From positions 62,001-126,000 of the IMG/VR virus record IMGVR_UViG_3300020469_003050: a DNA stretch of 64,000 nucleotides, one strand, 5' to 3'. Below are positions 6,920-41,337 of the stretch, in pieces (position 1 is the stretch's first letter; each line of letters starts with the position of its first letter). The notes beneath the pieces are model-generated. The model was given only the letters and a program-made list of their open reading frames with translations, was not told where the DNA came from and did no database searches. The position numbers and the translations under genes are program-made.

Positions 6920-7351
6920 ATGTTAATTAATATTTTATGGGCTTCAATGACTGGTAATGCAGAAGACGTTGCAGATAATTTTGAAGTGATTGCTAAGAAA
7001 AGAAATCATGAGGTCAACTTAGTTGAACTCAACGATGTAACTGCTGATAAACTACAAGAAATGAAACTTGCAGTTGTGGTTACATCAACTACAGGTGATG
7101 GTGATTTGCCTCATAATGGTGACGAGTTTTGGGATTGGTTAGAGAACTCAACTAGTCAATTTAAAAATCTTACATATTCTGTTTGTGCATTAGGTGATAG
7201 TTCACATCAGACTTTTTGTGGAGCAGGTAATAAAATAAACAGTAAACTAGATGAACTAGGTGCAACACGTATTAAAAATATTATAGAATGTGATTGTGGC
7301 ACTGAAGGTTCAGAAGAATGGTTTAAAGAACTACTAAAGGAAATTGAATGA
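6920..7351 (+). CDS. Flavodoxin
   Basis: SMTGNAE, TSTTGDGDLP and LGDSSH..FCGAG. Confidence 0.9.
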   Translation: MLINILWASMTGNAEDVADNFEVIAKKRNHEVNLVELNDVTADKLQEMKLAVVVTSTTGDGDLPHNGDEFWDWLENSTSQFKNLTYSVCALGDSSHQTFCGAGNKINSKLDELGATRIKNIIECDCGTEGSEEWFKELLKEIE

Positions 7352-18836: not shown

Positions 18837-18892
18837 AAAACTTGACAGAATCAAGAATCGTGTTATTATGTATACATAATGAAAAACAAAGG
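18837..18892 (+). repeat. 56-bp promoter+RBS block, copy 1
   Basis: 54/56 identical to 26550-26605; TTGACA-N16-TATTAT and AAAGG RBS. Confidence 0.9.
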
Positions 18893-18902
18893 AAATGAAA
18901 AT

Positions 18903-20030
18903 ATGTCTGCACAAGTTTCAATGAATGATATGGATGTTAGGATCGTAAGACCTAGCGACATTAAAGCTGAAATCAACTATGCTTTTAATAGGCAAAGACC
19001 AGTGTTTATATGGGGCCCTCCGGGTGTCGGTAAATCTGAAATAGTTGATACTATTACGCAAGAAAGGTCAGGTTATATGATTGACCTTAGACTTGCTCTT
19101 ATGGAACCTACTGATTTAAGAGGTATCCCTTATTACAATGAAAAGACAGGTCAAATGATGTGGGCTCCTCCTGCTGATTTACCAAGTCAAGAACTTGCTG
19201 ACCAGTTTGAAAACATTGTATTGTTTTTAGATGAAATGAACCAAGCACCGCAATCAGTACAAGCGGCGGCTTATCAACTTATTCTTAATAGAAGGTTAGG
19301 TTCTTATACACTTCCTGATAATGTTCTAATCGTTGCCGCTGGTAACAGAGAATCAGATAGAGGTGTTGCTTATAGAATGCCTTCTCCACTTGCTAACAGA
19401 TTTGTACACTTAGAAATGGGTGTTGACTTTGAAGATTGGCAGACTTGGGCTCTTGAAAACAAAATCCATTCTGATGTTGTAGGTTACTTAACATCTAACA
19501 AGATGGACTTGTTTAACTTTGACCCTAAAACTGCATCAAGGGCTTTCGCAACTCCAAGGTCTTGGACATTTACATCACAGTTGATGCCTACTAAGGACGA
19601 GACTATTGATGATAGTAAACTTCATGACTTGATTGCAGGTACTGTCGGTGATGGTGTTGCTACTAAGTTTATGGCTCACAGAGCGATTTCAGGTAAACTC
19701 CCTAATCCAACTGATATCTTAAATGGTAAGGTGAAAACGGTATCTAGGGAAGCTAAGGAAATCTCAGCTATGTTTTCTTTAACTGCATCACTTTGTTACG
19801 AGTTAAAAGAACATGCCGAAAAGAACAAAGGCAAAATGGACGAGTTATACAAAATGGCTGATAACTTTTTCAGGTTCATGATGGATAACTTTGAAACTGA
19901 AATGATTGTTCTAGGTGGTAGAACTGCACTAAAAGTTTACAAACTTCCACTAGAGCCTAGGAAGGTTCCTTGTATCGAGGAGTTCTTTAAGAAATACGGT
20001 AAGTTAATTATCGAGGCTCATAACGCATAA
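18903..20030 (+). CDS. MoxR-like AAA+ ATPase
   Basis: Walker A GPPGVGKS, Walker B FLDEMN, AAGNR and LANRF; start placed at the ATG after the AAAGG RBS. Confidence 0.9.
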   Translation: MSAQVSMNDMDVRIVRPSDIKAEINYAFNRQRPVFIWGPPGVGKSEIVDTITQERSGYMIDLRLALMEPTDLRGIPYYNEKTGQMMWAPPADLPSQELADQFENIVLFLDEMNQAPQSVQAAAYQLILNRRLGSYTLPDNVLIVAAGNRESDRGVAYRMPSPLANRFVHLEMGVDFEDWQTWALENKIHSDVVGYLTSNKMDLFNFDPKTASRAFATPRSWTFTSQLMPTKDETIDDSKLHDLIAGTVGDGVATKFMAHRAISGKLPNPTDILNGKVKTVSREAKEISAMFSLTASLCYELKEHAEKNKGKMDELYKMADNFFRFMMDNFETEMIVLGGRTALKVYKLPLEPRKVPCIEEFFKKYGKLIIEAHNA

Positions 20031-20057
20031 GAGCAGACACTTTATTGCGTTTCCAAG

Positions 20058-20089
20058 GGAGAGAGGTCTTGACTTCTCTCCTTTTTTTT
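20058..20089 (+). terminator. Intrinsic terminator overlapping the next promoter
   Basis: GGAGAGAGG-tcttga-CTTCTCTCC followed by T8. Confidence 0.75.
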
Positions 20090-20097
20090 GTTATAAT
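20069..20097 (+). promoter_or_regulatory. sigma70 promoter of biosynthetic cassette
   Basis: TTGACT-N17-TATAAT with TG extension; the -10 ends 5 nt before ATG 20103. Confidence 0.65.
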
Positions 20098-20102
20098 TAG
20101 AT

Positions 20103-21467
20103 ATGATTTGGGAAACAATTAAAGCACAGGCAAAGATCCACGGCAGTAAAACTGCCCTGATATGCCATGATAAGAAATACACATATAGCGAATTAGTTGA
20201 TAGTGTGGAGAAACTATCTGCTACATTATCTACAGCCATCAGACCTGGTGAGCGAGTATTATTTGCGAGTGAAAAAGAATATCATTATGTAAGAATGGTG
20301 CTGGCGTGTGATGCCTTAGGAGTAACATTCATGCCAACGTTTCCCAATTTATCTGATGAGATAGTTGAACGTATAAAGAATGCAAGTCACCCAAATCATA
20401 TAATTCTAAGTGAGGACGATGCATCAAAACTAGAGCCACATAATAAAGGCTTAATGTTTGCCAAAGGTGCAGATGATTTGTATACCGTTATATTTACTAG
20501 CGGTACTACAGGAGAGCCTAAGGCGGTCCCACATACTAGAATGGCTTGCATTCAAGGTTCAATACAAAACATACTAATACAAACTTTAACAAGTGACGAT
20601 GTAATACTTTCACAACTTCCTCCTTGGACTATTGGTGGTCTGTATCTTTATACACTTCCAGGTCTAATGAAAGGGTGTACAGTAATTTGTGAAATGTTTA
20701 ATGCTAGACGTTACATACAAATATGTAAAGAATACAAACCTACTATAGGTATTATTGTTCCTGCTATGATGTTAGCATTATCTAAAACAAGAGGATGGAA
20801 AGAGGCAGACTTATCTCATTGGCGTGAGTTAGGTTTCGGTAGTACAGTTTGTCCTAAAGAAATGCTACAAGAACTATTTGATAAAGGAGCACCTGCATTA
20901 AGAAACTTATATGGTTGTACTGAAACTCATGTACCAATGTTTACACACTTAGCAACTCCAGATGATCCATATCCTTTACAGATTCATATTACTGATAACT
21001 ATGATTTTAAATTAGATAGATATGGTGTTGCTTGGATTAAAGGTGATTGTGTTACAGAAGGATACTTGAATCAAGAAACACCTATAGACAAAGATGGCTA
21101 TTGGTGTACTGGTGATGTATTAGAAACTCAGCATAATCTTTTATTTTATAAATCACGTAAAACTGATTTAATCAAAGTTAATAGTTATAATGTATCTCCT
21201 GTTAGAGTAGAGAATATGTTTTTACCACATGATAATGTTAACGAAGTTTGTGTAACATATCGTGACAGAGGTCTAGGAGAGAAAGAAATAGTTGCAGTAG
21301 TCAGTACGGATAGCGAGATAAATAGTCTTGAATTGATGGACTTTGTTAAAGACAAACTATTTCAGTACGAGATACCTAAAGAAATTATTGTTACTAAAAA
21401 CCCATTACCTAGAAATCCTATGGGAAAAGTTCAAAGACATGTTGTCAAAGAACAATTTGTGGAGTAG
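20103..21467 (+). CDS. AMP-binding acyl-CoA/acyl-ACP synthetase
   Basis: FTSGTTGEPK, YGCTE, TGD and PRNPMGK ANL-family motifs. Confidence 0.9.
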   Translation: MIWETIKAQAKIHGSKTALICHDKKYTYSELVDSVEKLSATLSTAIRPGERVLFASEKEYHYVRMVLACDALGVTFMPTFPNLSDEIVERIKNASHPNHIILSEDDASKLEPHNKGLMFAKGADDLYTVIFTSGTTGEPKAVPHTRMACIQGSIQNILIQTLTSDDVILSQLPPWTIGGLYLYTLPGLMKGCTVICEMFNARRYIQICKEYKPTIGIIVPAMMLALSKTRGWKEADLSHWRELGFGSTVCPKEMLQELFDKGAPALRNLYGCTETHVPMFTHLATPDDPYPLQIHITDNYDFKLDRYGVAWIKGDCVTEGYLNQETPIDKDGYWCTGDVLETQHNLLFYKSRKTDLIKVNSYNVSPVRVENMFLPHDNVNEVCVTYRDRGLGEKEIVAVVSTDSEINSLELMDFVKDKLFQYEIPKEIIVTKNPLPRNPMGKVQRHVVKEQFVE

Positions 21468-21469
21468 AT

Positions 21470-23146
21470 ATGAAAACTAAATTAAACAAACTTGTAATCG
21501 TTGGCGGTGGAATAAACGGTTGGTTCACTGCAGGTTACATGAAAAATAAACACCCTTGGTTAGATGTTAAAATAATTGAGAGTGATACTATTCCTATTAT
21601 AGGTGTAGGAGAGAGTGTAGTTCCTCAAGTAAATGATTTACTAGAAACTTTAGGACTTGAGGAAAGAGATTGGATGAGTTATACAAATTCAATTTATAAA
21701 TTAGGCAATAAGTTTGTTGGTTGGAGTTCACCAGGCAAACGACACCATGTTACAGACCATTGGAACGCACCAAAGGAAGATGTACAATACTATTCATTTT
21801 CATTTGCATTGCCAGAAAAACATCTAACATCTAGTTTTTATAATCAATTAACAACTGATGATTATTTTACTAACTCTAAAGGCGAGGCAGGAGTAGATGA
21901 TAAATGGAATGACTATTGGTTACAATTAGTACGTGAGGGTAAAAGAAATCCTAAAGAATCCTCACAAGATACGCATGAACAACATTATCTGATGGACGGT
22001 AATAAGGCACCATTTGATATGAATGACAATCCTTTACTCGGAGACTGGCAGTCATACTCATTTCATTTAGATGCAAATAGATTTCCAGAACTTATTAGAG
22101 ACAAAGTTGCTTTACCTAAAGGTGTTCAGCATATCATAGGTGATGTAAAAGAAATCATCAAAGATGAGGACGGTTATATTACTAAACTATTATTAGAAGA
22201 TGGCACAGAACACGAAGCCGATTTGTTTGTCGATTGTTCAGGTTTACATAAAGTATTAGTAGGTGGAATGAATAATGAATGGCATGATTATGACTTTATT
22301 CATACACAGGATGCAGTAGTTGGTCCATTAAAATATAAAGATGTTTATAACGAGTTTAGACCTTACACACAAACATATGCACAAGATGAAGGTTGGAACT
22401 TTATTATCTCATTATATAATAGAATGGGTTCAGGATATATCTTTGATAGAACTGAGATATCTCCAGAAGATGCAATGGAAAAGTTTAAAAAGTATTGGGA
22501 AGGTTATGAGTTTATCAAACCACCAAAACATATTTCATGGAAAGCAGGACGTATGGTCACACCATGGAATAAAAATGTGTTAAGTATAGGAATGAGTCAT
22601 TCATTTATTGAACCAATGGAAGGCAATGCAATGTACATATCACAATGGGGTATACAGTTATTAGATAGATTCGTAAATCGACAACAAGAAGATGATGAAA
22701 TTATATCAGCAGGAAGTATACATGCATACAATAAGAGTATGAACGGTTTAGAAGACCATGTTGCAGACTTTATTGCATATCATTATACACTTACGAATAG
22801 AGAAGATACTAACTTTTGGAAGAAACAAAAAGAGTATGGTAAGAAACATAATCATAAAGAAGCCATATGGAAAGAATACAAAAACCCTTATAATCAAATA
22901 GGAAATAGTTTATATCCAGACTATATGTGGATGACTGTAGCAACTGCCATGGGGCATTTCGATGATACAGTTGAACTAAATACTAAAAAAGAATTAATGA
23001 ATAAAGCAGATATCATGTTTGAATATTGCAGAAAATTAAGTGAGGCACAAGGAGAAATGGCTCCACATGCATATGATTGGCATAGAAAGTTTCTGTTTAA
23101 CGGAAAGAGCCATGAGGAAGTATTAGAGGAAGCATTAAAGAAATAA
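21470..23146 (+). CDS. Flavin-dependent (tryptophan halogenase family) halogenase
   Basis: IVGGG..GW, IGVGES, YKLGNKF (catalytic Lys position), DLFVDCSG and FIEPME. Confidence 0.88.
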   Translation: MKTKLNKLVIVGGGINGWFTAGYMKNKHPWLDVKIIESDTIPIIGVGESVVPQVNDLLETLGLEERDWMSYTNSIYKLGNKFVGWSSPGKRHHVTDHWNAPKEDVQYYSFSFALPEKHLTSSFYNQLTTDDYFTNSKGEAGVDDKWNDYWLQLVREGKRNPKESSQDTHEQHYLMDGNKAPFDMNDNPLLGDWQSYSFHLDANRFPELIRDKVALPKGVQHIIGDVKEIIKDEDGYITKLLLEDGTEHEADLFVDCSGLHKVLVGGMNNEWHDYDFIHTQDAVVGPLKYKDVYNEFRPYTQTYAQDEGWNFIISLYNRMGSGYIFDRTEISPEDAMEKFKKYWEGYEFIKPPKHISWKAGRMVTPWNKNVLSIGMSHSFIEPMEGNAMYISQWGIQLLDRFVNRQQEDDEIISAGSIHAYNKSMNGLEDHVADFIAYHYTLTNREDTNFWKKQKEYGKKHNHKEAIWKEYKNPYNQIGNSLYPDYMWMTVATAMGHFDDTVELNTKKELMNKADIMFEYCRKLSEAQGEMAPHAYDWHRKFLFNGKSHEEVLEEALKK

Positions 23147-23871
23147 TGACATACCAAAATAGAGTAACATTGAAAGTATTTTTTATGTTAGCAGTATCCG
23201 TAATTGGAATACCTGCTTACTTCTATATGGGTGGTTCATGGCAACTTGCTCTTGCTTTTACTTTGTATGGTTGTGTTACAAATGCATTATCACAAATTGC
23301 ATATCATAGATGGTTATGTCACGACCAGTTTGTTCCACATAGACTAGGACGTTTAGCAATGTTATATGGTATTGTTATGAGTGCTAATGGTAGTCCTATA
23401 CAATATGTTTACTCACATTTAAATCATCATAAGAATTCAGATAAAGAAAAAGATACACACAATCCAGCAGAGTTAGGATTGTTTAAAATGTGGTTAGGTC
23501 AGTATAAGTCACCAGAAGATTATATTAGTTTACGTTTCTTGTTAAGAAAACGTGATGTAGTTTTTGTTAATAGATATTACTGGAAACTATATGCATTGTT
23601 TACATTAATACATTTTATCATAACACCTTGGTTAGTTGTATGGCAAGCATTTAATTTTACTCACATGTGGATAGCATTAACTTGGTTGAACTATGCGGCT
23701 CACAAAGATGGTGGTCCTAGTAAACTAACTGGCTTTGCAAACATATGGATGATGGGCGAAGGTTGCCATGACATACATCATAAGTATGCGAGTAGATTAG
23801 ATATGTCACACGAAGATTTAACAGATTGGGCTGGCAGATATTATATACCAGCATTGTTGGCTAGAAGATGA
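23146..23871 (+). CDS. Membrane fatty-acid desaturase family protein
   Basis: His boxes HRWLCH, HLNHH and HDIHH; TM segments. Confidence 0.85.
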   Translation: MTYQNRVTLKVFFMLAVSVIGIPAYFYMGGSWQLALAFTLYGCVTNALSQIAYHRWLCHDQFVPHRLGRLAMLYGIVMSANGSPIQYVYSHLNHHKNSDKEKDTHNPAELGLFKMWLGQYKSPEDYISLRFLLRKRDVVFVNRYYWKLYALFTLIHFIITPWLVVWQAFNFTHMWIALTWLNYAAHKDGGPSKLTGFANIWMMGEGCHDIHHKYASRLDMSHEDLTDWAGRYYIPALLARR

Positions 23872-24038
23872 GAAGTTTATTAAAAATATGGCAGTATGCT
23901 TTAGGTTCTTATTCAGATGATAAGACAAAACCTTATGACAAACAAATGTTAATCATAAGAACTTTTTGGGTACTACTACACATTGCTACATGTGTAATGA
24001 TTATATTAGGTAACGGTCATTTGATGGGCTGGTGGTAA
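23868..24038 (+). CDS. 56-aa membrane protein (not in ORF track)
   Basis: MRSLLKIWQYALGSYSDDKTKPYDKQMLIIRTFWVLLHIATCVMIILGNGHLMGWW; ATGA and TAATG coupling at both ends. Confidence 0.7.
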   Translation: MRSLLKIWQYALGSYSDDKTKPYDKQMLIIRTFWVLLHIATCVMIILGNGHLMGWW

Positions 24039-24652
24039 TGAAAGTATTAGAAACTTTTACTGGTGCAGATAATTATGAATTCAAAGTAGTAGAATACGAT
24101 AGCACATTAAAGTCAGACCTAGAAGAATTCTGTCAGAAATGTGACAAGGTAGGTATTCTAAATAATGCAAGTTTAAAAGCATTGAAGTTTGGTAAATGGG
24201 GTAAGCAAGAGAATTGGTGGTTTGTTTATCATAAGGATGAAATAGTATCAATGGCAGGCGCACATTATTTGCCTCATGTACATGATAAATGTTATATGAT
24301 AAATTATAGATTAGCAACACTTCCTGAATGGAGAAACATGGCAGACGATAGACAAAATAGTAGAAGAATGTATCATGAGTTTGGATTTGCTAGACTTGTT
24401 CCTTTCATGGCTGATTGGGCTGTAGAACAAGGTGCAACTGATTGTGTAGTAACTACTGCATCAGAAGACCACAGTGAAGATAGAAGTGGTACGATGCATA
24501 AGATATGGAGATTTGCTTATGTAGTTTGGCCACATGAAGATAAGTTATCTCTATTACATAAAGATTTCCCATTGTATGGTATTAAGCAAGATGTTTGGAG
24601 ATTTAATTGGAGAAACTTTCGTACAGGTGAGAGGATAGAATATGCTAGATAA
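24038..24652 (+). CDS. GNAT-like acyltransferase (putative)
   Basis: IVSMAG..YRLATLPEWRN resembles GNAT motif A. Confidence 0.5.
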   Translation: MKVLETFTGADNYEFKVVEYDSTLKSDLEEFCQKCDKVGILNNASLKALKFGKWGKQENWWFVYHKDEIVSMAGAHYLPHVHDKCYMINYRLATLPEWRNMADDRQNSRRMYHEFGFARLVPFMADWAVEQGATDCVVTTASEDHSEDRSGTMHKIWRFAYVVWPHEDKLSLLHKDFPLYGIKQDVWRFNWRNFRTGERIEYAR

Positions 24653-25418
24653 AATAACATATGGTTGGAAAATGAGAATACTATGGATTGTATTGCATAT
24701 TGTATTAATTTACAGTATCATATCAGCGCCAGAGTATTTTTGGTATTCATTTGCATGGGGGTGTATAACAACTATGGTAGGCGGCTTTGCTGGTTGGCAT
24801 AGATATTGGGCACACAGAAGTTATCAGACAGGAAGGAAAAGACAAGTACTTCTTCTTTGGTGGGGTGCATTAGGCTTTCCAGGTAAACCACTTCCTACTA
24901 TAGGTGGACATAGATTGCATCACAAATATGCAGATGTAGAAGGCATGGATATTCATTCACCAAGAGAAAAATCATGGTGGGAAAACTTAATGGGATTCTA
25001 TGAAGACTTCCCTAAAGAAAGAAGAATTTTTAAAGACTTGTATATGGATCCGCAAGTAAGATTTATGCAACGATATTATTTTCAAATTATAACAGTTGCA
25101 ATGATTGTACTATTCTTAATTGATCCAATCTTACCAGGTTATGTATTAGGTATCACAGGTGTATATCAATTCTGGGTAGGTACATTTGGTATAGTACATT
25201 TGCTACACATATTTGGTAAAGCAGACCATGATACAGGAGACGATAGTAAAAATAGTTGGTTACTTGCATTGTTTACATTCGGAGAAGGTTGGCACAACAA
25301 TCATCATAACAATAGTTTAAGTTATACCACACAAGAAAAATGGTATCAGTTTGACCCAACCGGGTTAGTAATTAAATATTTCATAGCAACGGATTTAAAA
25401 CATGACCGTATATATTAA
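24642..25418 (+). CDS. Delta-9-type acyl desaturase
   Basis: HRYWAHRSY, HRLHH..D...DIHSP and GEGWHNNHH. Confidence 0.92.
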   Translation: MLDKITYGWKMRILWIVLHIVLIYSIISAPEYFWYSFAWGCITTMVGGFAGWHRYWAHRSYQTGRKRQVLLLWWGALGFPGKPLPTIGGHRLHHKYADVEGMDIHSPREKSWWENLMGFYEDFPKERRIFKDLYMDPQVRFMQRYYFQIITVAMIVLFLIDPILPGYVLGITGVYQFWVGTFGIVHLLHIFGKADHDTGDDSKNSWLLALFTFGEGWHNNHHNNSLSYTTQEKWYQFDPTGLVIKYFIATDLKHDRIY

Positions 25419-26550
25419 CGACTTGTCTTGCTTTACACCTTTCGGTGATTTAGAGCAAACATGGAAGGGCGTAACAGAAAACAAAGTAGCATACGGACCT
25501 ATTACTAAGTTTGACCCAAACGAAAGTAGATATACACGAAGCAAAGTAGCGGGCGAGTTTCATTTTAATGCAGAAGATTATCCTATCATAACTGAGTCAG
25601 AACGTGATAGACTTCCAGAATCTAATCAATGGGCTTTAGCATTAGCAAGTAAGATAGATTTAGATATTATAGATAAAAGCAGAACAGGTGTTATTGTATC
25701 ACCAGGCTTTTCAATGTACTTAGAAATACTAAAAGCAAATAAGGACAATGCAGATAACATTTATCATTACTGTCCTGATATGATTGCACACAATATAAAC
25801 ATGAAATATGGTTTAACTGGTGCTAGTGCAATGACATTAACCGCATGTAGTACAGGTGTTTATAGTGTAATATGGGCGGCTATGATGATTGAAATGGGAA
25901 TGATAGACCATGCTTTAGCAGGCTCAGTAGACGTAACAATACACCCTGATGCATTCAAACAGATGGGTAAATTAAGAGCATTGACAACTAAATTCAATGA
26001 TACACCAGAAAAAGCATCAAGACCTTATGATACAAAACGTGACGGTTTAGTATTAAGTGAGGGTGGTGCAATATTCTTATTAAGTAAAAATAAAACAAAT
26101 AAAACAATCTGTCAGATAGATGGTTATGCAGTAAACAATGATGCATATCAAACTGTCGCACCTCACCCTAACGGAGAAGAAGTGCAGAAATGTATGGCAG
26201 AGGCTCTAAAAGGCAGAATACCTAGTCTTATTAATGTACACGGTACATCTACTCCTATGGGAGATTATGCTGAATTAGATGCTATTAATAGACTAGGATT
26301 ACAAGAAGTGCCGATTACTGCGAACAAATCTCAACTAGGACATTGTATGGGAGCCGCTGGTTCTGTAGAGTTAGCTATGTCTATAATGTCTCTAAAACAT
26401 GCTATTATACCGCCTACGGTGAACGTAGAAGAGGTTGAAGAAGGATATAGTCCAAAGATATACAATAAGTCAACTAGTGCAGAAATAACGTCTGTATTGT
26501 GTAATTCCTTCGGTTTTGGCGGTACAAATGCTAGTATTTTAGTTAGTTGA
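25402..26550 (+). CDS. fabF: Beta-ketoacyl-ACP synthase II
   Basis: TACSTG (Cys), SRPYD..RDG, HGTST, KSQLGH and NSFGFGGTN. Confidence 0.92.
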   Translation: MTVYINDLSCFTPFGDLEQTWKGVTENKVAYGPITKFDPNESRYTRSKVAGEFHFNAEDYPIITESERDRLPESNQWALALASKIDLDIIDKSRTGVIVSPGFSMYLEILKANKDNADNIYHYCPDMIAHNINMKYGLTGASAMTLTACSTGVYSVIWAAMMIEMGMIDHALAGSVDVTIHPDAFKQMGKLRALTTKFNDTPEKASRPYDTKRDGLVLSEGGAIFLLSKNKTNKTICQIDGYAVNNDAYQTVAPHPNGEEVQKCMAEALKGRIPSLINVHGTSTPMGDYAELDAINRLGLQEVPITANKSQLGHCMGAAGSVELAMSIMSLKHAIIPPTVNVEEVEEGYSPKIYNKSTSAEITSVLCNSFGFGGTNASILVS

Positions 26551-26605
26551 AAACTTGACAATATCAAGAATCGTGTTATTATGTATACATAATGAAAAAC
26601 AAAGG
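26550..26605 (+). repeat. 56-bp promoter+RBS block, copy 2
   Basis: Near-identical to 18837-18892. Confidence 0.9.
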
Positions 26606-26615
26606 TAACTCAAAT

Positions 26616-27935
26616 ATGCAAGTACAAGAACAAAAATCTATTGACGATATTGTAGATGGTGCATTAAAAGATGCAGGTATCGAAATTGATGAGAACTCAG
26701 CAGAACCCGTAGTATTTGACTATACTGATAGGGAAGTCAAAGAAATGATTGTTGCTGGTAGAGTTAGAATGCTTATCAAACATCCGTTCTTTGGTACACT
26801 TGCTACAAGATTAAAATTAGTTGAGGCAGAATGGTGTCCAACAGCCGCAGTTGACGGCAAACATTTTTATTATAACTGTGATTTTTTCAGAACTCTAACA
26901 CCGGAAGAGATTGACTTTGTAGTAGGTCATGAGGTTCTTCACTGTGTTTATGACCATTGTGGTGAAGGTGGTCGTCTATTTGATTTCGATGAGAAGGATC
27001 GTGATGCTAAACTTTGGAACATAGCCGCTGACTATAAAGTTAATCAAGGTTGTGTTGAAAGTAGAATTGGTGTTATGCCAAAGTCTGCATTATTTGATCC
27101 TAAGTATCATGGTAAGTACACTGAGGAGATTTATCAGTATCTAAAAACTACAGGTCAAGGTCAAGATAAAGAAACACTTGACCAACATATCATGGGTAAT
27201 GGTAATGACTCAACAGGTGGTACTGGTGAAAACGATCCTACAGGACGTAAAGCACCAATCAAGATTTCTAAGGAAGAGGCAAAACAACTTAAAGACCAAA
27301 TGAAACAGGCTGTTGTTCAAGCGGCTCAAACTGCTGGTGCTGGTAATATGCCTGGTGATATTAAAAGACTTGTCAAATCTATGACAGAACCTAAGATGGA
27401 TTGGAGACAGTTACTTAATACATCTATTCTAAGTTTACTTAAATCAGATTTTACATGGATGAAACAATCAAGAAAATCTAGGTCAATGGGTGTTTATCTT
27501 CCAGGTCAAAACAATGATACTATGATTGACTTAGGTATTGGTCTTGATGTTTCAGGTTCTATTGACAATAAAATGTTAGCCGACTTCATGGGTGAAGTTG
27601 GAGGCATCATGCAACAGTTTCAGGACTTTAGACTTAGAGTTTGGACTTTCGATACTGAGGTCAACGAATATTCTTTCAAAGAATTCACACCAATGAATGC
27701 TGATGAGATTAAAGATTACGAAATCAAAGGCGGTGGTGGTACTGATTTTGATTGTAACTTTACTTTCATGGAAAACAACGATATCATTCCTGATAAGTTT
27801 GTAATGTTTACTGATGGGTATCCATTTGGTAGTTGGGGTAACCCAAACTATTGTGATACACTATTTGTTATTCATGGTAGTGACCAAATTATCCCACCAT
27901 TCGGCGAACACGCCTACTATCACAAAGCCGCATAA
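26616..27935 (+). CDS. Metallopeptidase-like + VWA domain protein (DUF2201-like), MoxR partner
   Basis: HEVLH, WNIAADY.VN, MIDAS DVSGS, GGGGTDF and FTDG. Confidence 0.85.
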   Translation: MQVQEQKSIDDIVDGALKDAGIEIDENSAEPVVFDYTDREVKEMIVAGRVRMLIKHPFFGTLATRLKLVEAEWCPTAAVDGKHFYYNCDFFRTLTPEEIDFVVGHEVLHCVYDHCGEGGRLFDFDEKDRDAKLWNIAADYKVNQGCVESRIGVMPKSALFDPKYHGKYTEEIYQYLKTTGQGQDKETLDQHIMGNGNDSTGGTGENDPTGRKAPIKISKEEAKQLKDQMKQAVVQAAQTAGAGNMPGDIKRLVKSMTEPKMDWRQLLNTSILSLLKSDFTWMKQSRKSRSMGVYLPGQNNDTMIDLGIGLDVSGSIDNKMLADFMGEVGGIMQQFQDFRLRVWTFDTEVNEYSFKEFTPMNADEIKDYEIKGGGGTDFDCNFTFMENNDIIPDKFVMFTDGYPFGSWGNPNYCDTLFVIHGSDQIIPPFGEHAYYHKAA

Positions 27936-30701: not shown

Positions 30702-31571
30702 ATGGCTAATTGGGAAGAAGAGGAATACCTTTCCTTACTACAACATGTAATGGATACAGGCGAGAAGCGAGACCAAGAACGAACTGGTACAGGAACTCGT
30801 AGTATATTTTATGCACATTTAAACTTTCAACTTGAAGCTGGTCTACCTTTATTAACAACTAAAAAAGTAAACTTCAAAGCAATACTAAGTGAATTACTTT
30901 GGTTCTTAGAAGGGTCTAGTGATGAACGTAGACTAGCAGAAATTCATTACGGTGATAAACGAGAGAATTTAATTGGTAAGAGAACTATTTGGACTGACAA
31001 TGCTGACAAGCAAGGTAAAGAATTAGGCTTTACTAACACTGATACAGTAAAGAACTTAGGACCAGTGTATGGTGTTCAATGGAGAAATTCTAACGGTGTT
31101 GACCAGATAGCTGAAATTATAAAAACTATTAAAGAGAATCCACAATCACGTAGACATATTCTTAATGCATGGAATCCAAGGGATGTAGATATGATGGCTT
31201 TACCACCATGTCATACTATGTCACAATTCTATGTATCTAATGATAGAAAATTATCTTGTAACATGTATCAACGTAGTGCAGATTTATTTTTAGGAGTTCC
31301 ATTTAACATTGCATCATATTCATTATTAACTTATATGATTGCACATGTTTGTAAGTTAGGTGTTGGTGATTTTAATCATATCTTTGGTGACTGTCACGTA
31401 TATGAGGATCACTTTGATGCAGTCAAAGAGCAATTAGAAAGACAAGCAGAACATTTTCCTAAACTAAAAATTAATAGAACTGTTGAGTCTATAGATGATT
31501 TTAAAATAGAAGATTTTGAATTGATTGGTTACGACCCTCAGCCTTTTATTAAAGCATCGATGTCAGTTTAG
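30702..31571 (+). CDS. thyA: Thymidylate synthase
   Basis: RTGTGT, PLLTTKK, LPPCH and YQRSADLFLGVPFN. Confidence 0.97.
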   Translation: MANWEEEEYLSLLQHVMDTGEKRDQERTGTGTRSIFYAHLNFQLEAGLPLLTTKKVNFKAILSELLWFLEGSSDERRLAEIHYGDKRENLIGKRTIWTDNADKQGKELGFTNTDTVKNLGPVYGVQWRNSNGVDQIAEIIKTIKENPQSRRHILNAWNPRDVDMMALPPCHTMSQFYVSNDRKLSCNMYQRSADLFLGVPFNIASYSLLTYMIAHVCKLGVGDFNHIFGDCHVYEDHFDAVKEQLERQAEHFPKLKINRTVESIDDFKIEDFELIGYDPQPFIKASMSV

Positions 31572-32007
31572 CAACTCTATCTTTATGTCTACCACCTTCA
31601 AATTTGGTAGTTAAAAACTTATCAACAATTTTTAATGCATCTTTTGTAGAAGTAAAATCTGCACCTAAACATAATACGTTTGCATCATTATGTAGTCTTG
31701 CCATTTCTGCTTCTTTAGGAGTGCGAACTGTTACTGCACGAATATGTGGATATCGATTGGCCGCTATTGCTACACCAAACCCAGAACCACATACTAAAAT
31801 CCCTCTATCAAAAACTGACTTCATTTCTAAAGCCAAACTCTTTACTACATCTGGATAATCTACTTTTGCTTTACTATCATAGCAACCACAATCTAAATAT
31901 GTTACTATATCGCTTGTTATATCTTTGTCAATAGGAACAAGATGTTTCTCTATTGCACATTTTAATTCATAACCTCTATGGTCTGAACCTGTTATTAAAT
32001 CAGTCAT
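31549..32007 (-). CDS. rpiB: Ribose-5-phosphate isomerase B
   Basis: GSDHRG, DYPD, CGSGFG, ARLHNDAN and FEGGRH; start reassigned to ATG 32007. Confidence 0.92.
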   Translation of the reverse strand: MTDLITGSDHRGYELKCAIEKHLVPIDKDITSDIVTYLDCGCYDSKAKVDYPDVVKSLALEMKSVFDRGILVCGSGFGVAIAANRYPHIRAVTVRTPKEAEMARLHNDANVLCLGADFTSTKDALKIVDKFLTTKFEGGRHKDRVAKLTSML

Positions 32008-32696
32008 TAAAAATCTATTTCCCTTCCTTTGTTTTCCCATGTACCAAATCTTGTAGGCTCTGCACCTTTAGGTCCACCCAACTCAGTAGGTATTTCCCAC
32101 GGTAAAGGTTTAGATTTATCTATTATTGGTTTAGGTAAACAAAATACTAAATGTGTTCTTAATATCTTACTTGCGTTTATGGCGGTGTGTCTTTTTGTAG
32201 TATCAACTTTATATACTCCACCATATGGTATTCTGCATACTTTATCATCGATAACCATAAAACATTTATCATCAGTTACTAAAGGAATATGCAATCTTGG
32301 TGTGTTGTCTTTATGATATGTTAAACATTTTTTCATTCCTAACATCATAAATCTACCTCTCAGGACTCCATATTCTTCGTATAATGCATTTACTACTTCG
32401 CCTATATATGTACCTTTCCATATATCACAAACTAGATTAAATACATCTTCTTCTAGTACTACATCACGTACTTTAGGTCCTGAGTTTTCGTAATCTTGTT
32501 CTGGAAAGTAATTATCCCAATCGTATAGCAAACTGCCACAACTATCAGTTAATTGCTTTTCACCCTCAATACCTTCTCTACATTGAACTGCTATCTGATA
32601 TTCATTATCAATAAGTTTCTGTTCAATGTCAAGTCCTTTGAACTCTCCTACAAGTCTCTTGTAATCGAATTCTATGTCTAATTTTTCTACACTCAT
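32007..32696 (-). CDS. 2OG-Fe(II)/Asp-Asn beta-hydroxylase-like oxygenase
   Basis: YHKD...RLHIPL...HTAIN...RTHLV. Confidence 0.7.
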   Translation of the reverse strand: MSVEKLDIEFDYKRLVGEFKGLDIEQKLIDNEYQIAVQCREGIEGEKQLTDSCGSLLYDWDNYFPEQDYENSGPKVRDVVLEEDVFNLVCDIWKGTYIGEVVNALYEEYGVLRGRFMMLGMKKCLTYHKDNTPRLHIPLVTDDKCFMVIDDKVCRIPYGGVYKVDTTKRHTAINASKILRTHLVFCLPKPIIDKSKPLPWEIPTELGGPKGAEPTRFGTWENKGREIDF

Positions 32697-33613
32697 TCAA
32701 AGTCCTCGTAATGTTTGTCGTGTTCTTGCAAAGCATAAGACAAACATAATCTATTAATATATCCGTCTCTTTCAAAATGATTGTCTTTATCTTTTGTACT
32801 AATGCCAAAGATAACACTATCACTTGGTTCTATTTCTAATGTCTTTGCTAACTCGATTTGTTTCTGTCTATATTTATTACACATATAATCAGGACTGAAC
32901 TCTTTCATTAATTCTGAATGTATTTTCATTCCAGCCATCTGTGTATAAAAGTGTTGATTTTGTAATTGCAATGCGGTACGTTCAACATTTCTTTTATATA
33001 ACATACCTGTACGCAATCCTCCAGTAGCGAATGTCTTACTGAAACTAAATGCTACATGGGTTATGCATTTATGATTTAAATCTAATCTAGGTACTTCTGC
33101 TACACCAAACAAACAACAATCTATGAATATAGCAACATTTCTTTTATTACATGTTTCTATTATTCTATCCCAGTCAAAATGTACGTTCCCAGTAGCACTA
33201 AAAGGATAACTTATAATCAAAGATGAATTGATTGGTATGTCTTTATATGTATCTAATACAGGTATCCCTAGGTCCCTGTGATACGTGTACTCGCCTCTGA
33301 GTACATGTAAGTATTTTGCAGTCTCATAGAAGTCGGTAAATGCATCAGTAATACCGTTAGTAACTAATCTATTAGTAAACTTATCAAGTCCCATTATCTT
33401 AAACTTTTTACTAGAATGTATCCACTCATCATATTGTTCTAAGAATGCCATTTGGTCATGTAATATTGAAAAGTCATAAGAGTCATTAAAGATATTAACT
33501 GAACTTCCTACCTCAATAACATCTTCATCTACAATAGCTTTTGCTTTACGAATAGCCTGTTCTCTATTCTCACAATGTTCTGTAAATAAATCTATCTTAT
33601 CTAATCTTTTCAT
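32693..33613 (-). CDS. PLP-dependent aminotransferase-like (fold I)
   Basis: PFSATGN, IFIDC and FSFSKTF..GLRTG (PLP lysine). Confidence 0.7.
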   Translation of the reverse strand: MKRLDKIDLFTEHCENREQAIRKAKAIVDEDVIEVGSSVNIFNDSYDFSILHDQMAFLEQYDEWIHSSKKFKIMGLDKFTNRLVTNGITDAFTDFYETAKYLHVLRGEYTYHRDLGIPVLDTYKDIPINSSLIISYPFSATGNVHFDWDRIIETCNKRNVAIFIDCCLFGVAEVPRLDLNHKCITHVAFSFSKTFATGGLRTGMLYKRNVERTALQLQNQHFYTQMAGMKIHSELMKEFSPDYMCNKYRQKQIELAKTLEIEPSDSVIFGISTKDKDNHFERDGYINRLCLSYALQEHDKHYEDFE

Positions 33614-34760
33614 TTGGATATATTCTTACTTGGTGGCCTGGTGCCCTTTTTGGTATCTTACTATCTGCACTTGAAACACAACTTTCACTAATACACGGCT
33701 TAGGCTTATCAAATAGTTTAAATCCACTTTCGATATATCCTAGTGGTTCATCTGCACAACTGTAAGAACGTTTAATACTTCCGTCTGGTTCTCTTATGAT
33801 AACACCTTTGAAGCCACTAGTACAATCCCAACCTTTGAACTTATTAAAGTTGAAAGCATTAAATCTTTCTGCTTGGTCTATGTACCACTTCTTGCCTTTG
33901 CTATCTTCAAACTCTACTTGCATGATTGGTGGGACACCTTTATCATCACCATTCATTATGTCTTGGTTCCACATAGTCTTTGCTGGCTTAGGTCTTATAA
34001 TCTTTTTACCTGTTGTCTTTTGTAAATCATCTGTGTATGCACGTTGTGGCATACCATTCTGCATAATCTCTAATTGCTTATCTGTATAACCTTTAACAAC
34101 AAAAGAAGCAGTAGGATCAGATTGAGGCTTTAACGTAACATTAATACCTCTGTTATGAAAGTATAATGCATTATCCCAATCAACATCAAATCTTTCAGGA
34201 ACAAGAACCATATTAATAGTTACTTGTATATCATATTCCATACATAATAAAAGTTTGTCTGCAAATTCTTCTGGCTTTGCAAACTCTCTATGATAACTGG
34301 CTGTAATACTTGCTCTATGCATTTTACCTACTATCTCAGCATACTTTATAAACCAATCTTTTTTACGAGAGATATTACTAGTCATATGAACGCTAGTGTA
34401 ATTACAATTATCGACATCATCAGCCAAATGTTGTAAGATGTCCAAGTATCCTGGATGGAAAGTAGGCTCACCACCAGATAAACTAAAATGAAAACTATTA
34501 AACCCATTATCACGTGCTTGCCTCTTTATCTCATCAATAGTTGCTAAACACAATTCTGTAGGTCTATGGTCTTTTCTATCTGACCTAGCATAAGGCCAAC
34601 AGTAACTACATTTATAATTACAGAAACGACCTAGTAACCAAGACACTGAGAATAAATCTCTATACAATAAAGTACGTTGTCCTACTTTGACAATATCATC
34701 AAAAGGTATCTTAGTAAAATCATACTGTGACCATTTAAGTGATTGCTTATCTATTTCCAT
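33597..34760 (-). CDS. Radical SAM protein (class C)
   Basis: WLLGRFCNYKCSYC, SGGEPT and C-terminal Cys cluster (WDCTSG...C...C...C). Confidence 0.9.
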   Translation of the reverse strand: MEIDKQSLKWSQYDFTKIPFDDIVKVGQRTLLYRDLFSVSWLLGRFCNYKCSYCWPYARSDRKDHRPTELCLATIDEIKRQARDNGFNSFHFSLSGGEPTFHPGYLDILQHLADDVDNCNYTSVHMTSNISRKKDWFIKYAEIVGKMHRASITASYHREFAKPEEFADKLLLCMEYDIQVTINMVLVPERFDVDWDNALYFHNRGINVTLKPQSDPTASFVVKGYTDKQLEIMQNGMPQRAYTDDLQKTTGKKIIRPKPAKTMWNQDIMNGDDKGVPPIMQVEFEDSKGKKWYIDQAERFNAFNFNKFKGWDCTSGFKGVIIREPDGSIKRSYSCADEPLGYIESGFKLFDKPKPCISESCVSSADSKIPKRAPGHQVRIYPNEKIR

Positions 34761-34761
34761 C

Positions 34762-36189
34762 TTATACCTTATATTTCTTCATTGCGTTATACAACTCTGG
34801 TAATTGTTTTTCCATGTTTTCGTTTCTGATTCCATCAAGTTTCTCATTGTATTGCCAGAACTTCTTGTTATTTTCTTCTGTGAACCAATCTTCATCATAC
34901 ATAAACTTAATATTATTATCAAGTAATTGGTCCATTTTCATTATAGCCCACTCTTTGTTTGCAGGCTTAATCATTCCCATTGCCATAGGATTTTTCTTAG
35001 CGAGTGAATGATAGTCAATATTATTTACTATTTCTGTTTTGAACTCTGTTCTAAATTCTTCCCATTTATCACGTACTTGGTCTTTTACTTCTAATGGTAG
35101 AAATCTTGTTGCTAATTCATGTGGTTTATGTATTGGGTGTGCATTAATAAATGGCTTAGGATTATTCTTTAGCATAGGAGATATAACTGCAAAGTCTTGT
35201 TCTATCTTCCACTTTAAGAAATCTGTAAAATGAAAAGCATTCAGGGCACCAATAGTAAATGCTATCCAGGCTCTGAAATTCATTTTCTCTAAACCAACTT
35301 CATCTAGTCTTACTAAATTCTTTTCCATTAGTTTTGACTTAAGTGGGTTACGTACATATTCTAATGTCTCACCTATTCCGTCCATTGATATACCAAACTG
35401 AACTTGCTTAAATTGTTTCCATAACTCTAATGCTCTAGGTTGAATGTTAGTTAAGTTAGTATTGTATTCAAGTGTCATTTCTTTTGCTTTATCTACTTCG
35501 ACACAATACTTTAAGAAATCATAATGTTCTTCAATGATAAGAGGTTCACCACCTACTAGATAAACATGTTGCATTCCTTTTACGTTTTCTTTTAAATTCT
35601 CCCAGAAGTGATCCTTCTTAACCCAATCGTAATCGTTTGATACAAATCTACCTTTGTTATTCTTATACATTTCTACGATACCATGTGTATCTTTAAACTT
35701 ATTTGTACCCCACATCTTAACATAATCATCGTACCAAGAACTACTATCCATCGGAGAACACATACGACATTTTAAGTTACAGAAATTACCTAAACGAATA
35801 TCATAGTAAGTTTGTTTTATATGATTTAAATCTATTGTACCATCTTCTGAGGTATGTTCTTTCGCTTGTTCAAATGTTATATGTTGAGCAAATCTTTCGC
35901 CATCGTTAATACGTCTGGACTTCATACCTGATTTTTCTTCACGTAAACATCTAATACACTCTGCATGCCATTTGTTATCTAACATTGTTTTACGAATTTC
36001 TTTTGCTAGTGGAGAGTTAATCGCATCAGTAATCTTATCTTGTTTAAGATTATAGTTTGTCCCATCTTCTTTCTTATAGATACCTCGAGTAGGTCCTTGA
36101 TTGGCATGACAACATACACGCAAATCTCCATTTGCACGTGTTGAGATATTAATCCAAGGTAATATGCAAAATGTATCAGGCATATTCAT
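34762..36189 (-). CDS. Radical SAM protein with N-terminal Twitch/SPASM-like domain (class A)
   Basis: FCILPW..RVCC..CIRC; CNLKCRMC; GGEPL. Confidence 0.9.
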   Translation of the reverse strand: MNMPDTFCILPWINISTRANGDLRVCCHANQGPTRGIYKKEDGTNYNLKQDKITDAINSPLAKEIRKTMLDNKWHAECIRCLREEKSGMKSRRINDGERFAQHITFEQAKEHTSEDGTIDLNHIKQTYYDIRLGNFCNLKCRMCSPMDSSSWYDDYVKMWGTNKFKDTHGIVEMYKNNKGRFVSNDYDWVKKDHFWENLKENVKGMQHVYLVGGEPLIIEEHYDFLKYCVEVDKAKEMTLEYNTNLTNIQPRALELWKQFKQVQFGISMDGIGETLEYVRNPLKSKLMEKNLVRLDEVGLEKMNFRAWIAFTIGALNAFHFTDFLKWKIEQDFAVISPMLKNNPKPFINAHPIHKPHELATRFLPLEVKDQVRDKWEEFRTEFKTEIVNNIDYHSLAKKNPMAMGMIKPANKEWAIMKMDQLLDNNIKFMYDEDWFTEENNKKFWQYNEKLDGIRNENMEKQLPELYNAMKKYKV

Positions 36190-41330: not shown

Positions 41331-41337
41331 ACTGTAT

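What the first reader, a model, noticed from the sequence alone, without database searches (positions are those of the whole stretch)
20103..26550. Phage-encoded mini biosynthetic cluster for a halogenated/unsaturated acyl product
Seen: seven tightly coupled genes behind their own promoter: acyl-adenylating enzyme, flavin halogenase, desaturase, 56-aa membrane protein, GNAT-like protein, second desaturase and FabF ketosynthase, with the main catalytic motifs present. Known: ligase + ACP + desaturase is the logic of JamABC-type alkyne and polyyne pathways, and isolated halogenases and desaturases occur in marine phages. Inference: this is a complete load-extend-desaturate-halogenate-transfer line making a modified acyl chain, which the GNAT transfers to an amine (small molecule, lipid or virion protein). 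I do not know of a characterised phage pathway of this kind.
Basis: partly seen in the sequence, partly recalled or inferred. Interest (0 to 1): 0.9.

Follow-up and report, generated by a model that had tools for sequence, protein, structure and literature searches.

The report
Phage acyl-tailoring operon linked to radical-SAM island
An uncultivated marine jumbo phage carries a conserved seven-gene operon that most likely builds, desaturates, halogenates and transfers an acyl chain, and its parts recur in other phages attached to a widespread radical-SAM gene cluster, so it looks like the lipid arm of a larger, uncharacterised viral biosynthetic system.

Summary
At 20103-26550 (+) seven translationally coupled ORFs lie behind a conserved promoter: an adenylating ligase, a Trp-type flavin halogenase, two SCD/DesC-type desaturases, a 56-aa membrane protein, a GNAT-fold protein of a new family ("o206") and a FabF-like ketosynthase. 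Their catalytic motifs are intact. The window is part of a 342.6-kb IMG/VR contig.

The operon is conserved down to about 40-66% amino-acid identity, with dN/dS 0.06-0.23. It always sits between a MoxR ATPase and its peptidase-vWA partner. These two genes are directly adjacent in 17 relatives that lack the cassette.

It is not self-contained. No version carries an ACP, thioesterase, reductase or PPTase. The real ACP at 52981-53217 lies 26 kb away and was found only in close relatives.

Two new results change the reading. Ligase plus o206 is the conserved core: the two are fused in one protein and paired in a bacterial contig. In other uncultivated phages o206, ligase, halogenase, desaturases and an ACP follow directly, on the same strand, a homologue of the window's rSAM gene at 33597-34760.

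The cassette is therefore probably the acyl-tailoring and transfer module of the 31.5-53.2 kb rSAM cluster. The product is unknown.

The parts
20055..20084 (+). Terminator-like hairpin after the MoxR gene; it overlaps the -35 of the cassette promoter.
   Evidence: 13-pair stem followed by a T run; the stem is kept in relatives through changes on both arms.
20069..20097 (+). Sigma-70-like promoter TTGACT-17-TATAAT with an extended -10 TG. The ATG lies 5 nt after the -10, so the mRNA is leaderless or nearly so.
   Evidence: Both hexamers are conserved (the -35 TTGAC and five of six -10 positions invariant) in all 9 aligned relatives. No site of equal score lies inside the cassette.
20103..21467 (+). 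Lig: compact (454 aa) ANL-superfamily adenylate-forming ligase.
   Evidence: More than 80 metagenomic clusters at 50-89% identity, then a drop to 29% for cellular homologues.
21470..23146 (+). Hal: two-component flavin-dependent halogenase of the Trp-halogenase family (558 aa).
23146..23871 (+). Des1: divergent SCD/DesC-type membrane di-iron desaturase paralogue (241 aa).
   Evidence: E 9e-18 to Des2, His boxes aligned. His boxes at 54-59, 91-95, 208-212 and NYAAH at 182-186. TM segments.
23868..24038 (+). sm56: facultative 56-aa single-TM protein (phrog_1679).
   Evidence: Present only in the window, L003 and L047.
24038..24652 (+). o206: GNAT-fold protein of a new, mostly viral family, and the likely acyl-transfer step. 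The start is refined from GTG 24032 to ATG 24038.
24642..25418 (+). Des2: SCD/DesC-type membrane desaturase (258 aa).
25402..26550 (+). KS: FabF-like elongating beta-ketoacyl synthase with the Cys149/His280/His314 triad.
18879..20030 (+). Left flank: MoxR-like AAA+ ATPase (chaperone of group 2.2 jumbo phages).
   Evidence: PMC7824862. Directly adjacent to its vWA partner in 17 cassette-less relatives.
26592..27935 (+). Right flank: metallopeptidase-vWA (DUF2201) co-chaperone.
31549..52930 (-). Probable partner cluster. It holds seven radical-SAM/SPASM enzymes, an aminotransferase, two AspH-like oxygenases, a GT2-like 924-aa protein, a carbamoyltransferase, RpiB and a cupin. The upstream (5') end, at the high coordinate, is approximate.
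   Evidence: Homologous clusters in other phages carry o206, ligase, halogenase, desaturase and ACP genes as direct neighbours.
52981..53217 (+). Acyl carrier protein (78 aa, Ser37 in GIDSLD), divergent from the head of the rSAM cluster.
6920..7351 (+). Flavodoxin: a possible electron donor for the desaturases and rSAM enzymes (speculative link).
   Evidence: Flavodoxin_1, 8e-31.

Best explanation
The operon is the acyl-chain building, tailoring and transfer module of a larger phage biosynthetic system. The core of that system is the multi-radical-SAM cluster at 31.5-53.2 kb, with the ACP at its far end.

Proposed mechanism:
1. One conserved promoter drives a leaderless-type mRNA, and the seven ORFs are translationally coupled. 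The sequence shows this directly.
2. The ANL ligase adenylates a carboxylic acid, either a fatty or an aryl acid. This is inferred from intact motifs.
3. The FabF-like KS extends an acyl thioester by C2 units using malonyl-ACP, on the host AcpP or the phage ACP. Inferred.
4. One or two SCD/DesC-type O2-dependent desaturases introduce unsaturation. Inferred.
5. The Trp-type flavin halogenase, fed FADH2 by a host reductase, halogenates an electron-rich carbon (aromatic, enol or alkyne). It would not attack a plain alkyl carbon. This follows from family chemistry.
6. The GNAT-fold protein o206 works hand in hand with the ligase and moves the acyl group onto an amine. The most likely acceptor is a scaffold made by the rSAM/aminotransferase/glycosyltransferase/carbamoyltransferase cluster. 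This is inferred from fusions and recurrent linkage.

The end product would be a lipidated, possibly halogenated, metabolite or glycoconjugate made during infection. Its identity and role are unknown.
For: One functional unit:
- Synteny Lig-Hal-Des-(sm56)-o206-(Des)-KS is kept in about 20 viral or metagenomic loci down to 40-66% identity.
- dN/dS is 0.06-0.23 for every gene.
- Start and stop codons overlap, and the promoter is conserved.

Ligase plus o206 is the core:
- The reduced variant in L019-21 keeps only these two.
- P0249 is a natural AMP-binding plus o206 fusion, next to a FabF-like KS.
- A bacterial contig, L049, has an N-domain-only ligase overlapping an o206 gene.
- o206 has a GNAT fold.

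Link to the rSAM cluster:
- 27 of 80 viral loci fetched through rSAM386 carry an o206-family ORF within 10 kb, and 24 carry a desaturase homologue.
- Same-strand arrays occur directly after rSAM386: o206>Trp_halogenase>AMP-binding (L080); o206>AMP-binding (L101, L068, L085, L089); GNAT-like>desaturase>desaturase (L091, L117); ACP>desaturase>AspH-like>desaturase (L095, L108). See; Pfam-confirmed for L080, L091, L095 and L101.
- The same link appears in contigs of very different GC: L050 at 22% and L048 at 56%.
- o206 plus halogenase also pair in L026.

The cassette is an insertion: MoxR and vWA are adjacent in 17 relatives.
Against: - No chemistry was observed. Substrates, order of steps and product are all inferred.
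- Within the window's own lineage the rSAM cluster is present in every member, including the reduced variant, so co-occurrence there cannot discriminate.
- The linkage evidence comes from other phage groups, whose loci are partly related to one another.
- In the window the cassette is separated from the rSAM cluster by about 5 kb of nucleotide-metabolism genes and has its own promoter.
- o206 lacks the canonical GNAT Q/RxxGxG/A CoA-binding signature, and its acceptor is unknown.
- The ACP was found only in close relatives.
- SCD/DesC-type desaturases and fabF also occur in phages as plain lipid AMGs (PMC5776448, PMC7029224).
Confidence: 0.45

Rival explanations
1. Host membrane-lipid remodelling. 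The genes are auxiliary metabolic genes that change the host's fatty acids. The ligase re-activates free fatty acids, FabF elongates them, the Delta9-type desaturases raise unsaturation, and the GNAT-like enzyme makes N-acyl amino (phosphorus-free) lipids. The halogenase would be a passenger.
For: - Des2 is an SCD/DesC-type desaturase.
- Cyanophage DesC-like desaturases have proven Delta9 activity (PMC5776448).
- Freshwater pelagimyophages carry fabF plus a stearoyl-CoA desaturase (PMC7029224).
- The KS is closest to housekeeping FabF.
- The cassette holds no ACP or thioesterase, which fits use of host pools.
Against: - The halogenase is kept in every full cassette under purifying selection and pairs with o206 elsewhere.
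- Ligase and o206 occur without any lipid gene, next to rSAM operons.
- The ligase is no closer to fatty-acid ligases than to aryl-acid ligases.
Confidence: 0.2
2. One reading: a self-contained pathway of the JamABC or polyyne type. The ligase loads a fatty acid on the phage ACP, the KS extends it, the desaturases make ene/yne groups, the halogenase caps a terminal alkyne, and the GNAT off-loads the chain.
For: - The parts list matches: ligase, two desaturases, a flavin halogenase, and a real ACP in the genome.
- In L095 and L108 an ACP is directly followed by a desaturase.
Against: - The ACP is never in or next to the cassette and was seen only in relatives of at least 86% identity.
- The desaturases align with SCD1-type enzymes. 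Relation to JamB could not be tested.
- The halogenase groups with Trp/indole halogenases.
- The recurrent attachment of the parts to rSAM operons is left unexplained.
Confidence: 0.15
3. An aryl-starter pathway. The 4CL/MenE-like ligase activates an aromatic acid, the Trp-type halogenase halogenates its ring, and the KS extends it, as in brominated aryl-polyene or alkyl-aryl lipids.
For: - The best solved matches of the ligase include 4-coumarate, feruloyl and o-succinylbenzoate ligases.
- The halogenase class prefers aromatic substrates.
Against: - Similarity to fatty-acid ligases is equal.
- No KR/DH for polyene formation was found.
- This model leaves the desaturases without an obvious role.
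Confidence: 0.1
4. The genes are unrelated auxiliary genes that happen to lie together in a variable slot.
For: The MoxR-vWA interval holds unrelated genes in PA5oct and in Vibrio phage 2.275.O.
Against: - Order is conserved, the ORFs are translationally coupled and there is a single promoter.
- Subsets of the same genes recur together in independent contexts.
Confidence: 0.05

Closest known systems
Cyanophage DesC-like lipid desaturases (vFAD-I/II; Roitman et al., PMC5776448)
   Same: Phage-encoded membrane di-iron desaturases of the SCD/DesC type with three His boxes, from marine phages.
   Different: Here two paralogues only 26% identical to each other sit inside a seven-gene operon. tblastn found only Pelagibacter phage Mosig (24% identity) among cultured phages; the two other records that matched appear to be bacterial contigs (my reading). 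Substrate and regiochemistry are untested.
VirX1 and other cyanophage/pelagiphage Trp-halogenase homologues
   Same: Same Pfam family (PF04820), the catalytic Lys is conserved, and all are viral and marine.
   Different: Only 28-30% identical. There is a roughly 100-residue poorly aligned insert and a W-x-F-x-I-S variant of WxWxIP. The gene sits in an acyl-tailoring operon.
Cyanophage halogenase / carbamoyltransferase / 2OG-oxygenase clusters predicted to make a halogenated secondary metabolite (Iyer et al. 2021, PMC7824862)
   Same: Phage islands that combine a halogenase, carbamoyltransferase, cupin/DSBH oxygenases and sugar enzymes. A secondary-metabolite or glycan-decoration role has been proposed for them.
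   Different: No ligase, KS, desaturases, GNAT-like o206 or multi-rSAM core is described there.
JamABC(+JamD) alkyne/haloalkyne starter module and bacterial polyyne clusters
   Same: The logic of ligase plus carrier protein plus membrane desaturases, with a flavin halogenase in the jamaicamide case (PMC10088813 for JamB/JamC; the rest is from memory).
   Different: The ACP is not in the cassette. A FabF-type KS and a GNAT-fold protein are present. Homology to JamB or JamD was not tested.
Fatty-acyl nucleoside (tunicamycin-type) clusters: rSAM + GNAT N-acyltransferase + ACP + glycosyltransferase (recalled from memory; a lead, not a test)
   Same: A GNAT enzyme attaches an ACP-borne unsaturated fatty acyl chain to an amine on a scaffold built with a radical-SAM enzyme. 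Carbamoyltransferase, aminotransferase and 2OG oxygenases are common in related nucleoside pathways.
   Different: No sequence relationship was shown here. The phage system has seven rSAM enzymes and a ligase/KS/desaturase/halogenase set.
MoxR AAA+ / peptidase-vWA chaperone pair of group 2.2 jumbo phages (PMC7824862)
   Same: The flanking genes 18879-20030 and 26592-27935 are this pair, with 45% identity to PA5oct.
   Different: In the window's lineage the pair is split by the 6.5-kb cassette. It is contiguous in 17 relatives.

Membership tests
ANL adenylate-forming superfamily (Lig) | Core motifs A3 (T/SGTTGxPK), A5 (YGxTE), A7 (TGD), the A8 hinge and the A10 catalytic Lys; Pfam AMP-binding above its gathering score. 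| tested here: met
   (167 bits against a cut-off of 29.9; AMP-binding_C 27.7 against 24.5). One search gives the motif positions, including Lys442.
Named acyl-CoA ligase equivalogs or fatty acyl-AMP ligases (Lig) | A score above an NCBIfam equivalog cut-off, or the FAAL-specific insertion. | tested here: not met
   the best hit scores 206.8 bits against a cut-off of 476, and all hits are below cut-off. At 454 aa the protein leaves no room for a FAAL insertion (inference). Substrate class is undetermined.
Flavin-dependent (Trp-type) halogenase | GxGxxG FAD motif, the catalytic Lys (PrnA K79) and the conserved Glu segment. | tested here: met
   GGGINGW 12-18, Lys77 and EPME 381-384, all kept in the orthologues.
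Flavin-dependent (Trp-type) halogenase | A strict WxWxIP motif. | tested here: not met
   the motif is W-x-F-x-I-S/T/P in all cassette orthologues. It is a conserved variant, so function as a halogenase is probable but not certain.
SCD/DesC-type membrane fatty-acid desaturase (Des2) | Three His boxes (HxxxxH, HxxHH, HxxHH) and Pfam FA_desaturase above its gathering score. | tested here: met
   42.7 bits against 29.7; SCD1, E 1e-19, residues 4-256.
SCD/DesC-type membrane fatty-acid desaturase (Des1) | The same His boxes and family-model membership. | tested here: inconclusive
   No Pfam or PDB hit. However, it is homologous to Des2 (E 9e-18) with all His boxes aligned.
Beta-ketoacyl-ACP synthase II (FabF) | Cys-His-His triad, Lys, the GFGG gate, and the equivalog score. 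| tested here: inconclusive
   The triad and motifs are present. The TIGR03150 score of 249.6 is below the 493.75 cut-off. The protein is FabF-like, not a FabF equivalog.
GNAT superfamily (o206) | The GNAT fold. | tested here: met
   (pLDDT 92.7). (197 PDB hits at E<=1e-3; top 50 all GNAT; TM 0.45-0.63).. A profile hit to 3T9Y at E 2.3e-5. 3 of 97 family members hit Acetyltransf_1.
GNAT superfamily (o206) | The acyl-CoA pyrophosphate-binding signature Q/RxxGxG/A after strand beta4. | tested here: not met
   By inspection of alignments A1 and A2, no such motif lies in the 97-116 loop. The acyl donor may therefore not be CoA-bound (inference).
Acyl carrier protein (52981-53217) | The PP-binding domain with the DSL serine. 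| tested here: met
   47.9 bits against 20.8; GIDSLD 35-40.
JamABC-type alkyne cassette | Adjacent ligase, ACP and JamB-type desaturase. | tested here: not met
   No ACP lies within 10 kb of the cassette in any relative. JamB/JamD homology could not be tested because no reference sequence was at hand.
Self-contained biosynthetic gene cluster | Carrier protein, release enzyme and PPTase encoded with the core enzymes. | tested here: not met

The most novel reading that the evidence does not exclude
Uncultivated marine phages carry a widespread family of radical-SAM-centred biosynthetic islands: at least 269 IMG/VR loci, and none among 50,697 GenBank phage records. These islands accept plug-in lipid modules (ANL ligase plus a new GNAT-like transferase, ACP, desaturases, KS, halogenase). 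During infection they would make a previously unknown class of lipidated, sometimes halogenated, viral natural products or glycoconjugates. The window holds the most elaborate lipid module seen so far.
Probability: 0.35. Interest if true: 0.9.

Novelty: new variant of a known kind. Interest (0 to 1): 0.72.

Why it matters
Phage auxiliary genes are usually single enzymes that tweak host metabolism. Here five to seven enzymes are kept together under purifying selection in jumbo phages that have no cultured relative carrying them. Their parts are wired again and again to a multi-radical-SAM cluster.

If the system makes a lipidated, halogenated compound, it would be a rare case of a virus-encoded multi-step natural-product pathway. 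It would also supply new biocatalysts:
- a compact ligase;
- a GNAT-like transferase that may accept acyl-adenylates;
- minimal SCD-type desaturases of 241-258 aa;
- a variant flavin halogenase.

It would also open the question of what such a product does during infection: superinfection exclusion, host-envelope change, signalling or a toxin.

Tried and rejected
- DNA-level search of the cassette against GenBank phages found no match.
- tblastn of KS and ligase against phages gave only identities below 36%, in unannotated or evidently bacterial records. I rejected these as relatives.
- Looking for an ACP inside the extra DNA between KS and vWA in relatives found none.
- Genome-contig scans with the o206 alignment and with the fusion protein P0249 found nothing. 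These scans are pattern-limited, so absence from cellular genomes is not proven, and the bacterial contig L049 shows that cellular members exist. The broad alignment A3 was too diverse for a scan.
- The first o206 model, from 8 sequences, was only moderately confident (pLDDT 72.7). I replaced it with a 97-sequence model.
- Foldseek did not single out LuxI- or FeeM-type acyl-ACP-dependent GNATs among the top 50 matches, so I make no such assignment.
- Des1 alone finds nothing in the PDB.
- The rSAM386 profile against the PDB gave only generic rSAM similarity.
- The weak NCBIfam CmlS hit of the halogenase covers only the FAD motif, so I ignored it.
- Literature searches found no description of this cassette.
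- No tRNA lies in the window to help predict the host.


Full report
**1. What is there**

The window is part of IMGVR_UViG_3300020469_003050, a 342,607-bp viral contig. Several features mark it as a jumbo phage of the PA5oct / Rak2 / Atu_ph07 kind:
- a tail protein (phrog_27398, E 8e-136);
- HNH endonucleases, ThyA and DHFR;
- a MoxR ATPase with a peptidase-vWA partner, whose best cultured matches are jumbo phages (PA5oct 45% identity).

Iyer et al. describe this MoxR/vWA pair as a chaperone system of group 2.2 jumbo phages (PMC7824862).

Between the two chaperone genes lie seven + strand ORFs at 20103-26550.

| Gene | Coordinates | Evidence |
|---|---|---|
| ANL ligase | 20103-21467 | Intact A3, A5, A7, A8 and A10 motifs |
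| Trp-type flavin halogenase | 21470-23146 | FAD motif, Lys77 and the Glu segment |
| Des1 | 23146-23871 | 26% identical to Des2, E 9e-18, His boxes aligned; no Pfam hit |
| sm56 | 23868-24038 | 56-aa single-TM protein |
| o206 | 24038-24652 | GNAT fold: pLDDT 92.7; 197 PDB matches at E<=1e-3, top 50 all GNAT |
| Des2 | 24642-25418 | Aligns end to end with SCD1, E 1e-19 |
| KS | 25402-26550 | FabF-like, Cys149/His280/His314 |

Further support that o206 is a GNAT comes from a profile hit to GNAT 3T9Y (E 2.3e-5) and from 3 of 97 family members hitting Acetyltransf_1.

Gene junctions are +2, -1, -4, -1, -11 and -17 nt. A TTGACT-17-TATAAT promoter with an extended -10 overlaps the MoxR terminator hairpin and ends 5 nt before the ligase ATG. 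Nine relatives keep the promoter, and their hairpins carry changes on both arms that preserve pairing.

**2. Conservation**

Three architectures occupy the same slot.
- Type A: Lig-Hal-Des1-(sm56)-o206-Des2-KS. Found in the window, L003, L004, L006, L009-14 and L047.
- Type B: Lig-Hal-Des-o206-KS. Found in L005/L045, L022 (on a 472-kb contig), L043, L044 and L046.
- Type C (reduced): an N-domain-only ligase, o206, a DUF6356-like small protein and other genes. Found in L019-21.

Identities fall to 40-66%, and pairwise dN/dS is 0.06-0.23 for all cassette genes, similar to the flanking chaperones.

In 17 other relatives the MoxR and vWA genes are directly adjacent. In PA5oct and Vibrio phage 2.275.O the interval holds unrelated genes. 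The cassette is therefore an insertion into a variable slot.

The ligase has more than 80 metagenomic clusters at 50-89% identity, then drops to 29% for cellular enzymes. No GenBank phage has a close KS, ligase or desaturase. The halogenase is only 28-30% identical to cyanophage and pelagiphage halogenases, including that of Syn10.

**3. It is not self-contained**

No ACP-like ORF lies within 10 kb of the cassette in any version. The ACP at 52981-53217 is genuine. However, it lies 26 kb away and was found only in relatives of at least 86% identity. No thioesterase, KR/DH/ER, PPTase or flavin reductase turned up in the window. A flavodoxin (6920-7351) and a SAM synthetase (10223-11371) are present.

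**4. The ligase/o206 core**

A profile search shows that o206 belongs to a family of about 195 clusters at 50% identity (E<=1e-3), mostly 170-210 aa long. Four contexts are informative.
- P0249 is a natural fusion of an AMP-binding N-domain with an o206 domain. It lies next to a FabF-like KS.
- The bacterial contig L049 (which also carries PheST, FTHFS and HU) has an N-domain-only ligase overlapping an o206 gene, downstream of a GT2 gene.
- L019-21 keep only ligase plus o206.
- L026 has an o206 fusion next to a 351-aa Trp-halogenase (32-39% identical to the window's), an aminotransferase and a ligase fragment.

In several of these the ligase lacks its C-terminal subdomain and o206 follows at once. 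I found no Q/RxxGxG/A CoA-binding loop in o206. A plausible reading is that o206 accepts the acyl group straight from the ligase. This is an inference.

**5. Link to the radical-SAM cluster**

The minus strand from 31549 to about 52930 encodes seven rSAM/SPASM enzymes, an aminotransferase, two AspH-like oxygenases, a GT2-like protein, a carbamoyltransferase, RpiB and a cupin.

Two o206 family members from unrelated contigs abut homologues of this cluster. These are L048 (GC 56%) and L050 (GC 22%, where o206 is the last, overlapping gene of the rSAM operon).

I then used the most conserved rSAM gene (rSAM386, 33597-34760) as bait. IMG/VR returned at least 269 loci. GenBank phages returned none. 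Within 10 kb in the best 80 loci, 27 carry an o206-family ORF and 24 carry a desaturase homologue.

Same-strand arrays follow rSAM386 directly (Pfam-confirmed for L080, L091, L095 and L101):
- o206 > Trp_halogenase > AMP-binding (L080);
- o206 > AMP-binding (L101; also L068, L085 and L089, after an AspH-like gene);
- GNAT-like > desaturase > desaturase (L091, L117);
- ACP > desaturase > AspH-like > desaturase (L095, L108).

The window's parts list, apart from the KS and sm56, thus recurs piecemeal as add-ons of the rSAM cluster. In the window's lineage they are gathered with a KS into one operon 7 kb from the cluster, and the ACP sits at the cluster's other end.

**6. Interpretation**

The best-supported reading (confidence 0.45) is that the cassette is the acyl-chain building, tailoring and transfer arm of the rSAM-centred system, and that o206 acylates an amine made by that system.

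The halogenase class argues against halogenation of a plain alkyl carbon. It matches free-substrate Trp/indole halogenases and no carrier-tethered type at E<1e-5. Its target is probably an aromatic, enol or alkyne carbon, on either the acyl part or the scaffold.

The rivals are:
- host membrane-lipid remodelling (0.2). Precedents are cyanophage DesC-like desaturases (PMC5776448) and fabF plus SCD in pelagimyophages (PMC7029224);
- an aryl-starter pathway (0.1);
- chance co-location (0.05).

None of the chemistry has been observed.

**7. Novelty**

All the enzyme families are known, and phage islands with halogenases and carbamoyltransferases have been proposed to make secondary metabolites (PMC7824862). 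Four things are new:
- this conserved combination of genes;
- the o206 GNAT-like family and its coupling to truncated ANL ligases;
- the repeated wiring of these genes to a multi-rSAM cluster known only from uncultivated viruses;
- the absence of any description in the literature I could search.

I rate it a new variant of a known kind, with interest 0.72.

Noticed in passing
window 31549-53180 (- strand): A 22-kb cluster with seven radical-SAM/SPASM enzymes, an aminotransferase, two AspH-like oxygenases, a GT2-like 924-aa protein, a carbamoyltransferase, RpiB, DUF6071 and a cupin. Its most conserved gene (33597-34760) has at least 269 relatives in IMG/VR but none in 50,697 GenBank phage records.
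   Followed up: partly
window 18842-18869, 20069-20097, 26555-26582, 28543-28571: The four best promoter matches (11/12, all with an extended -10 TG) lie in intergenic DNA. For the three where I checked the distance (18842, 20069, 26555), the -10 ends 5-9 nt before the start codon. This suggests leaderless or near-leaderless mRNAs as a habit of this phage.
   Followed up: partly
L003:6051-7724 compared with window 21470-23146: In the 94%-identical relative the halogenase alone is only 64% identical (dS 1.35, against 0.15-0.45 for its neighbours). The halogenase allele seems to have been swapped by recombination inside the cassette.
   Followed up: partly
L019:10001-13367; L080:14014-14784; L101:12863-13630; L068:4026-4709: ANL ligases associated with o206 are often truncated. 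Some have only the N-domain (308-342 aa). Others are 228-257-aa ORFs that cover only the middle part of the Pfam AMP-binding profile (about positions 170-355). How these would adenylate without the C-terminal Lys is unexplained.
   Followed up: no
L019:11570-11851, L026:10280-10537, L030:1160-1444: A small DUF6356-like membrane protein (85-94 aa) follows o206 or its halogenase partner in three different contexts. It is absent from the window, where the unrelated sm56 occupies a similar place.
   Followed up: no
L027:7530-8588: A T4_deiodinase-family gene lies about 5 kb from the ligase-o206 fusion and its KS. This may be coincidence, or a dehalogenation or redox partner.
   Followed up: no
window 52326-53180 (-): The listed 284-aa ORF runs antisense through the ACP gene. 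Its low-complexity N-terminal third is probably not translated, and the cupin gene likely starts at an internal Met near 52930.
   Followed up: no
window 6920-7351, 8523-9200, 10223-11371, 13236-13946, 15006-15980, 16787-18058: Other auxiliary genes are present: flavodoxin, GTP cyclohydrolase I, SAM synthetase, a phosphomannomutase-like protein, an SbmA/BacA-like inner-membrane transporter and a DegP-like protease with a PDZ domain.
   Followed up: no
L048:8551-9912: The rSAM386 homologue of this GC-56% contig is split into two ORFs (303 and 49 aa). This could be a frameshift, a pseudogene or an assembly error.
   Followed up: no
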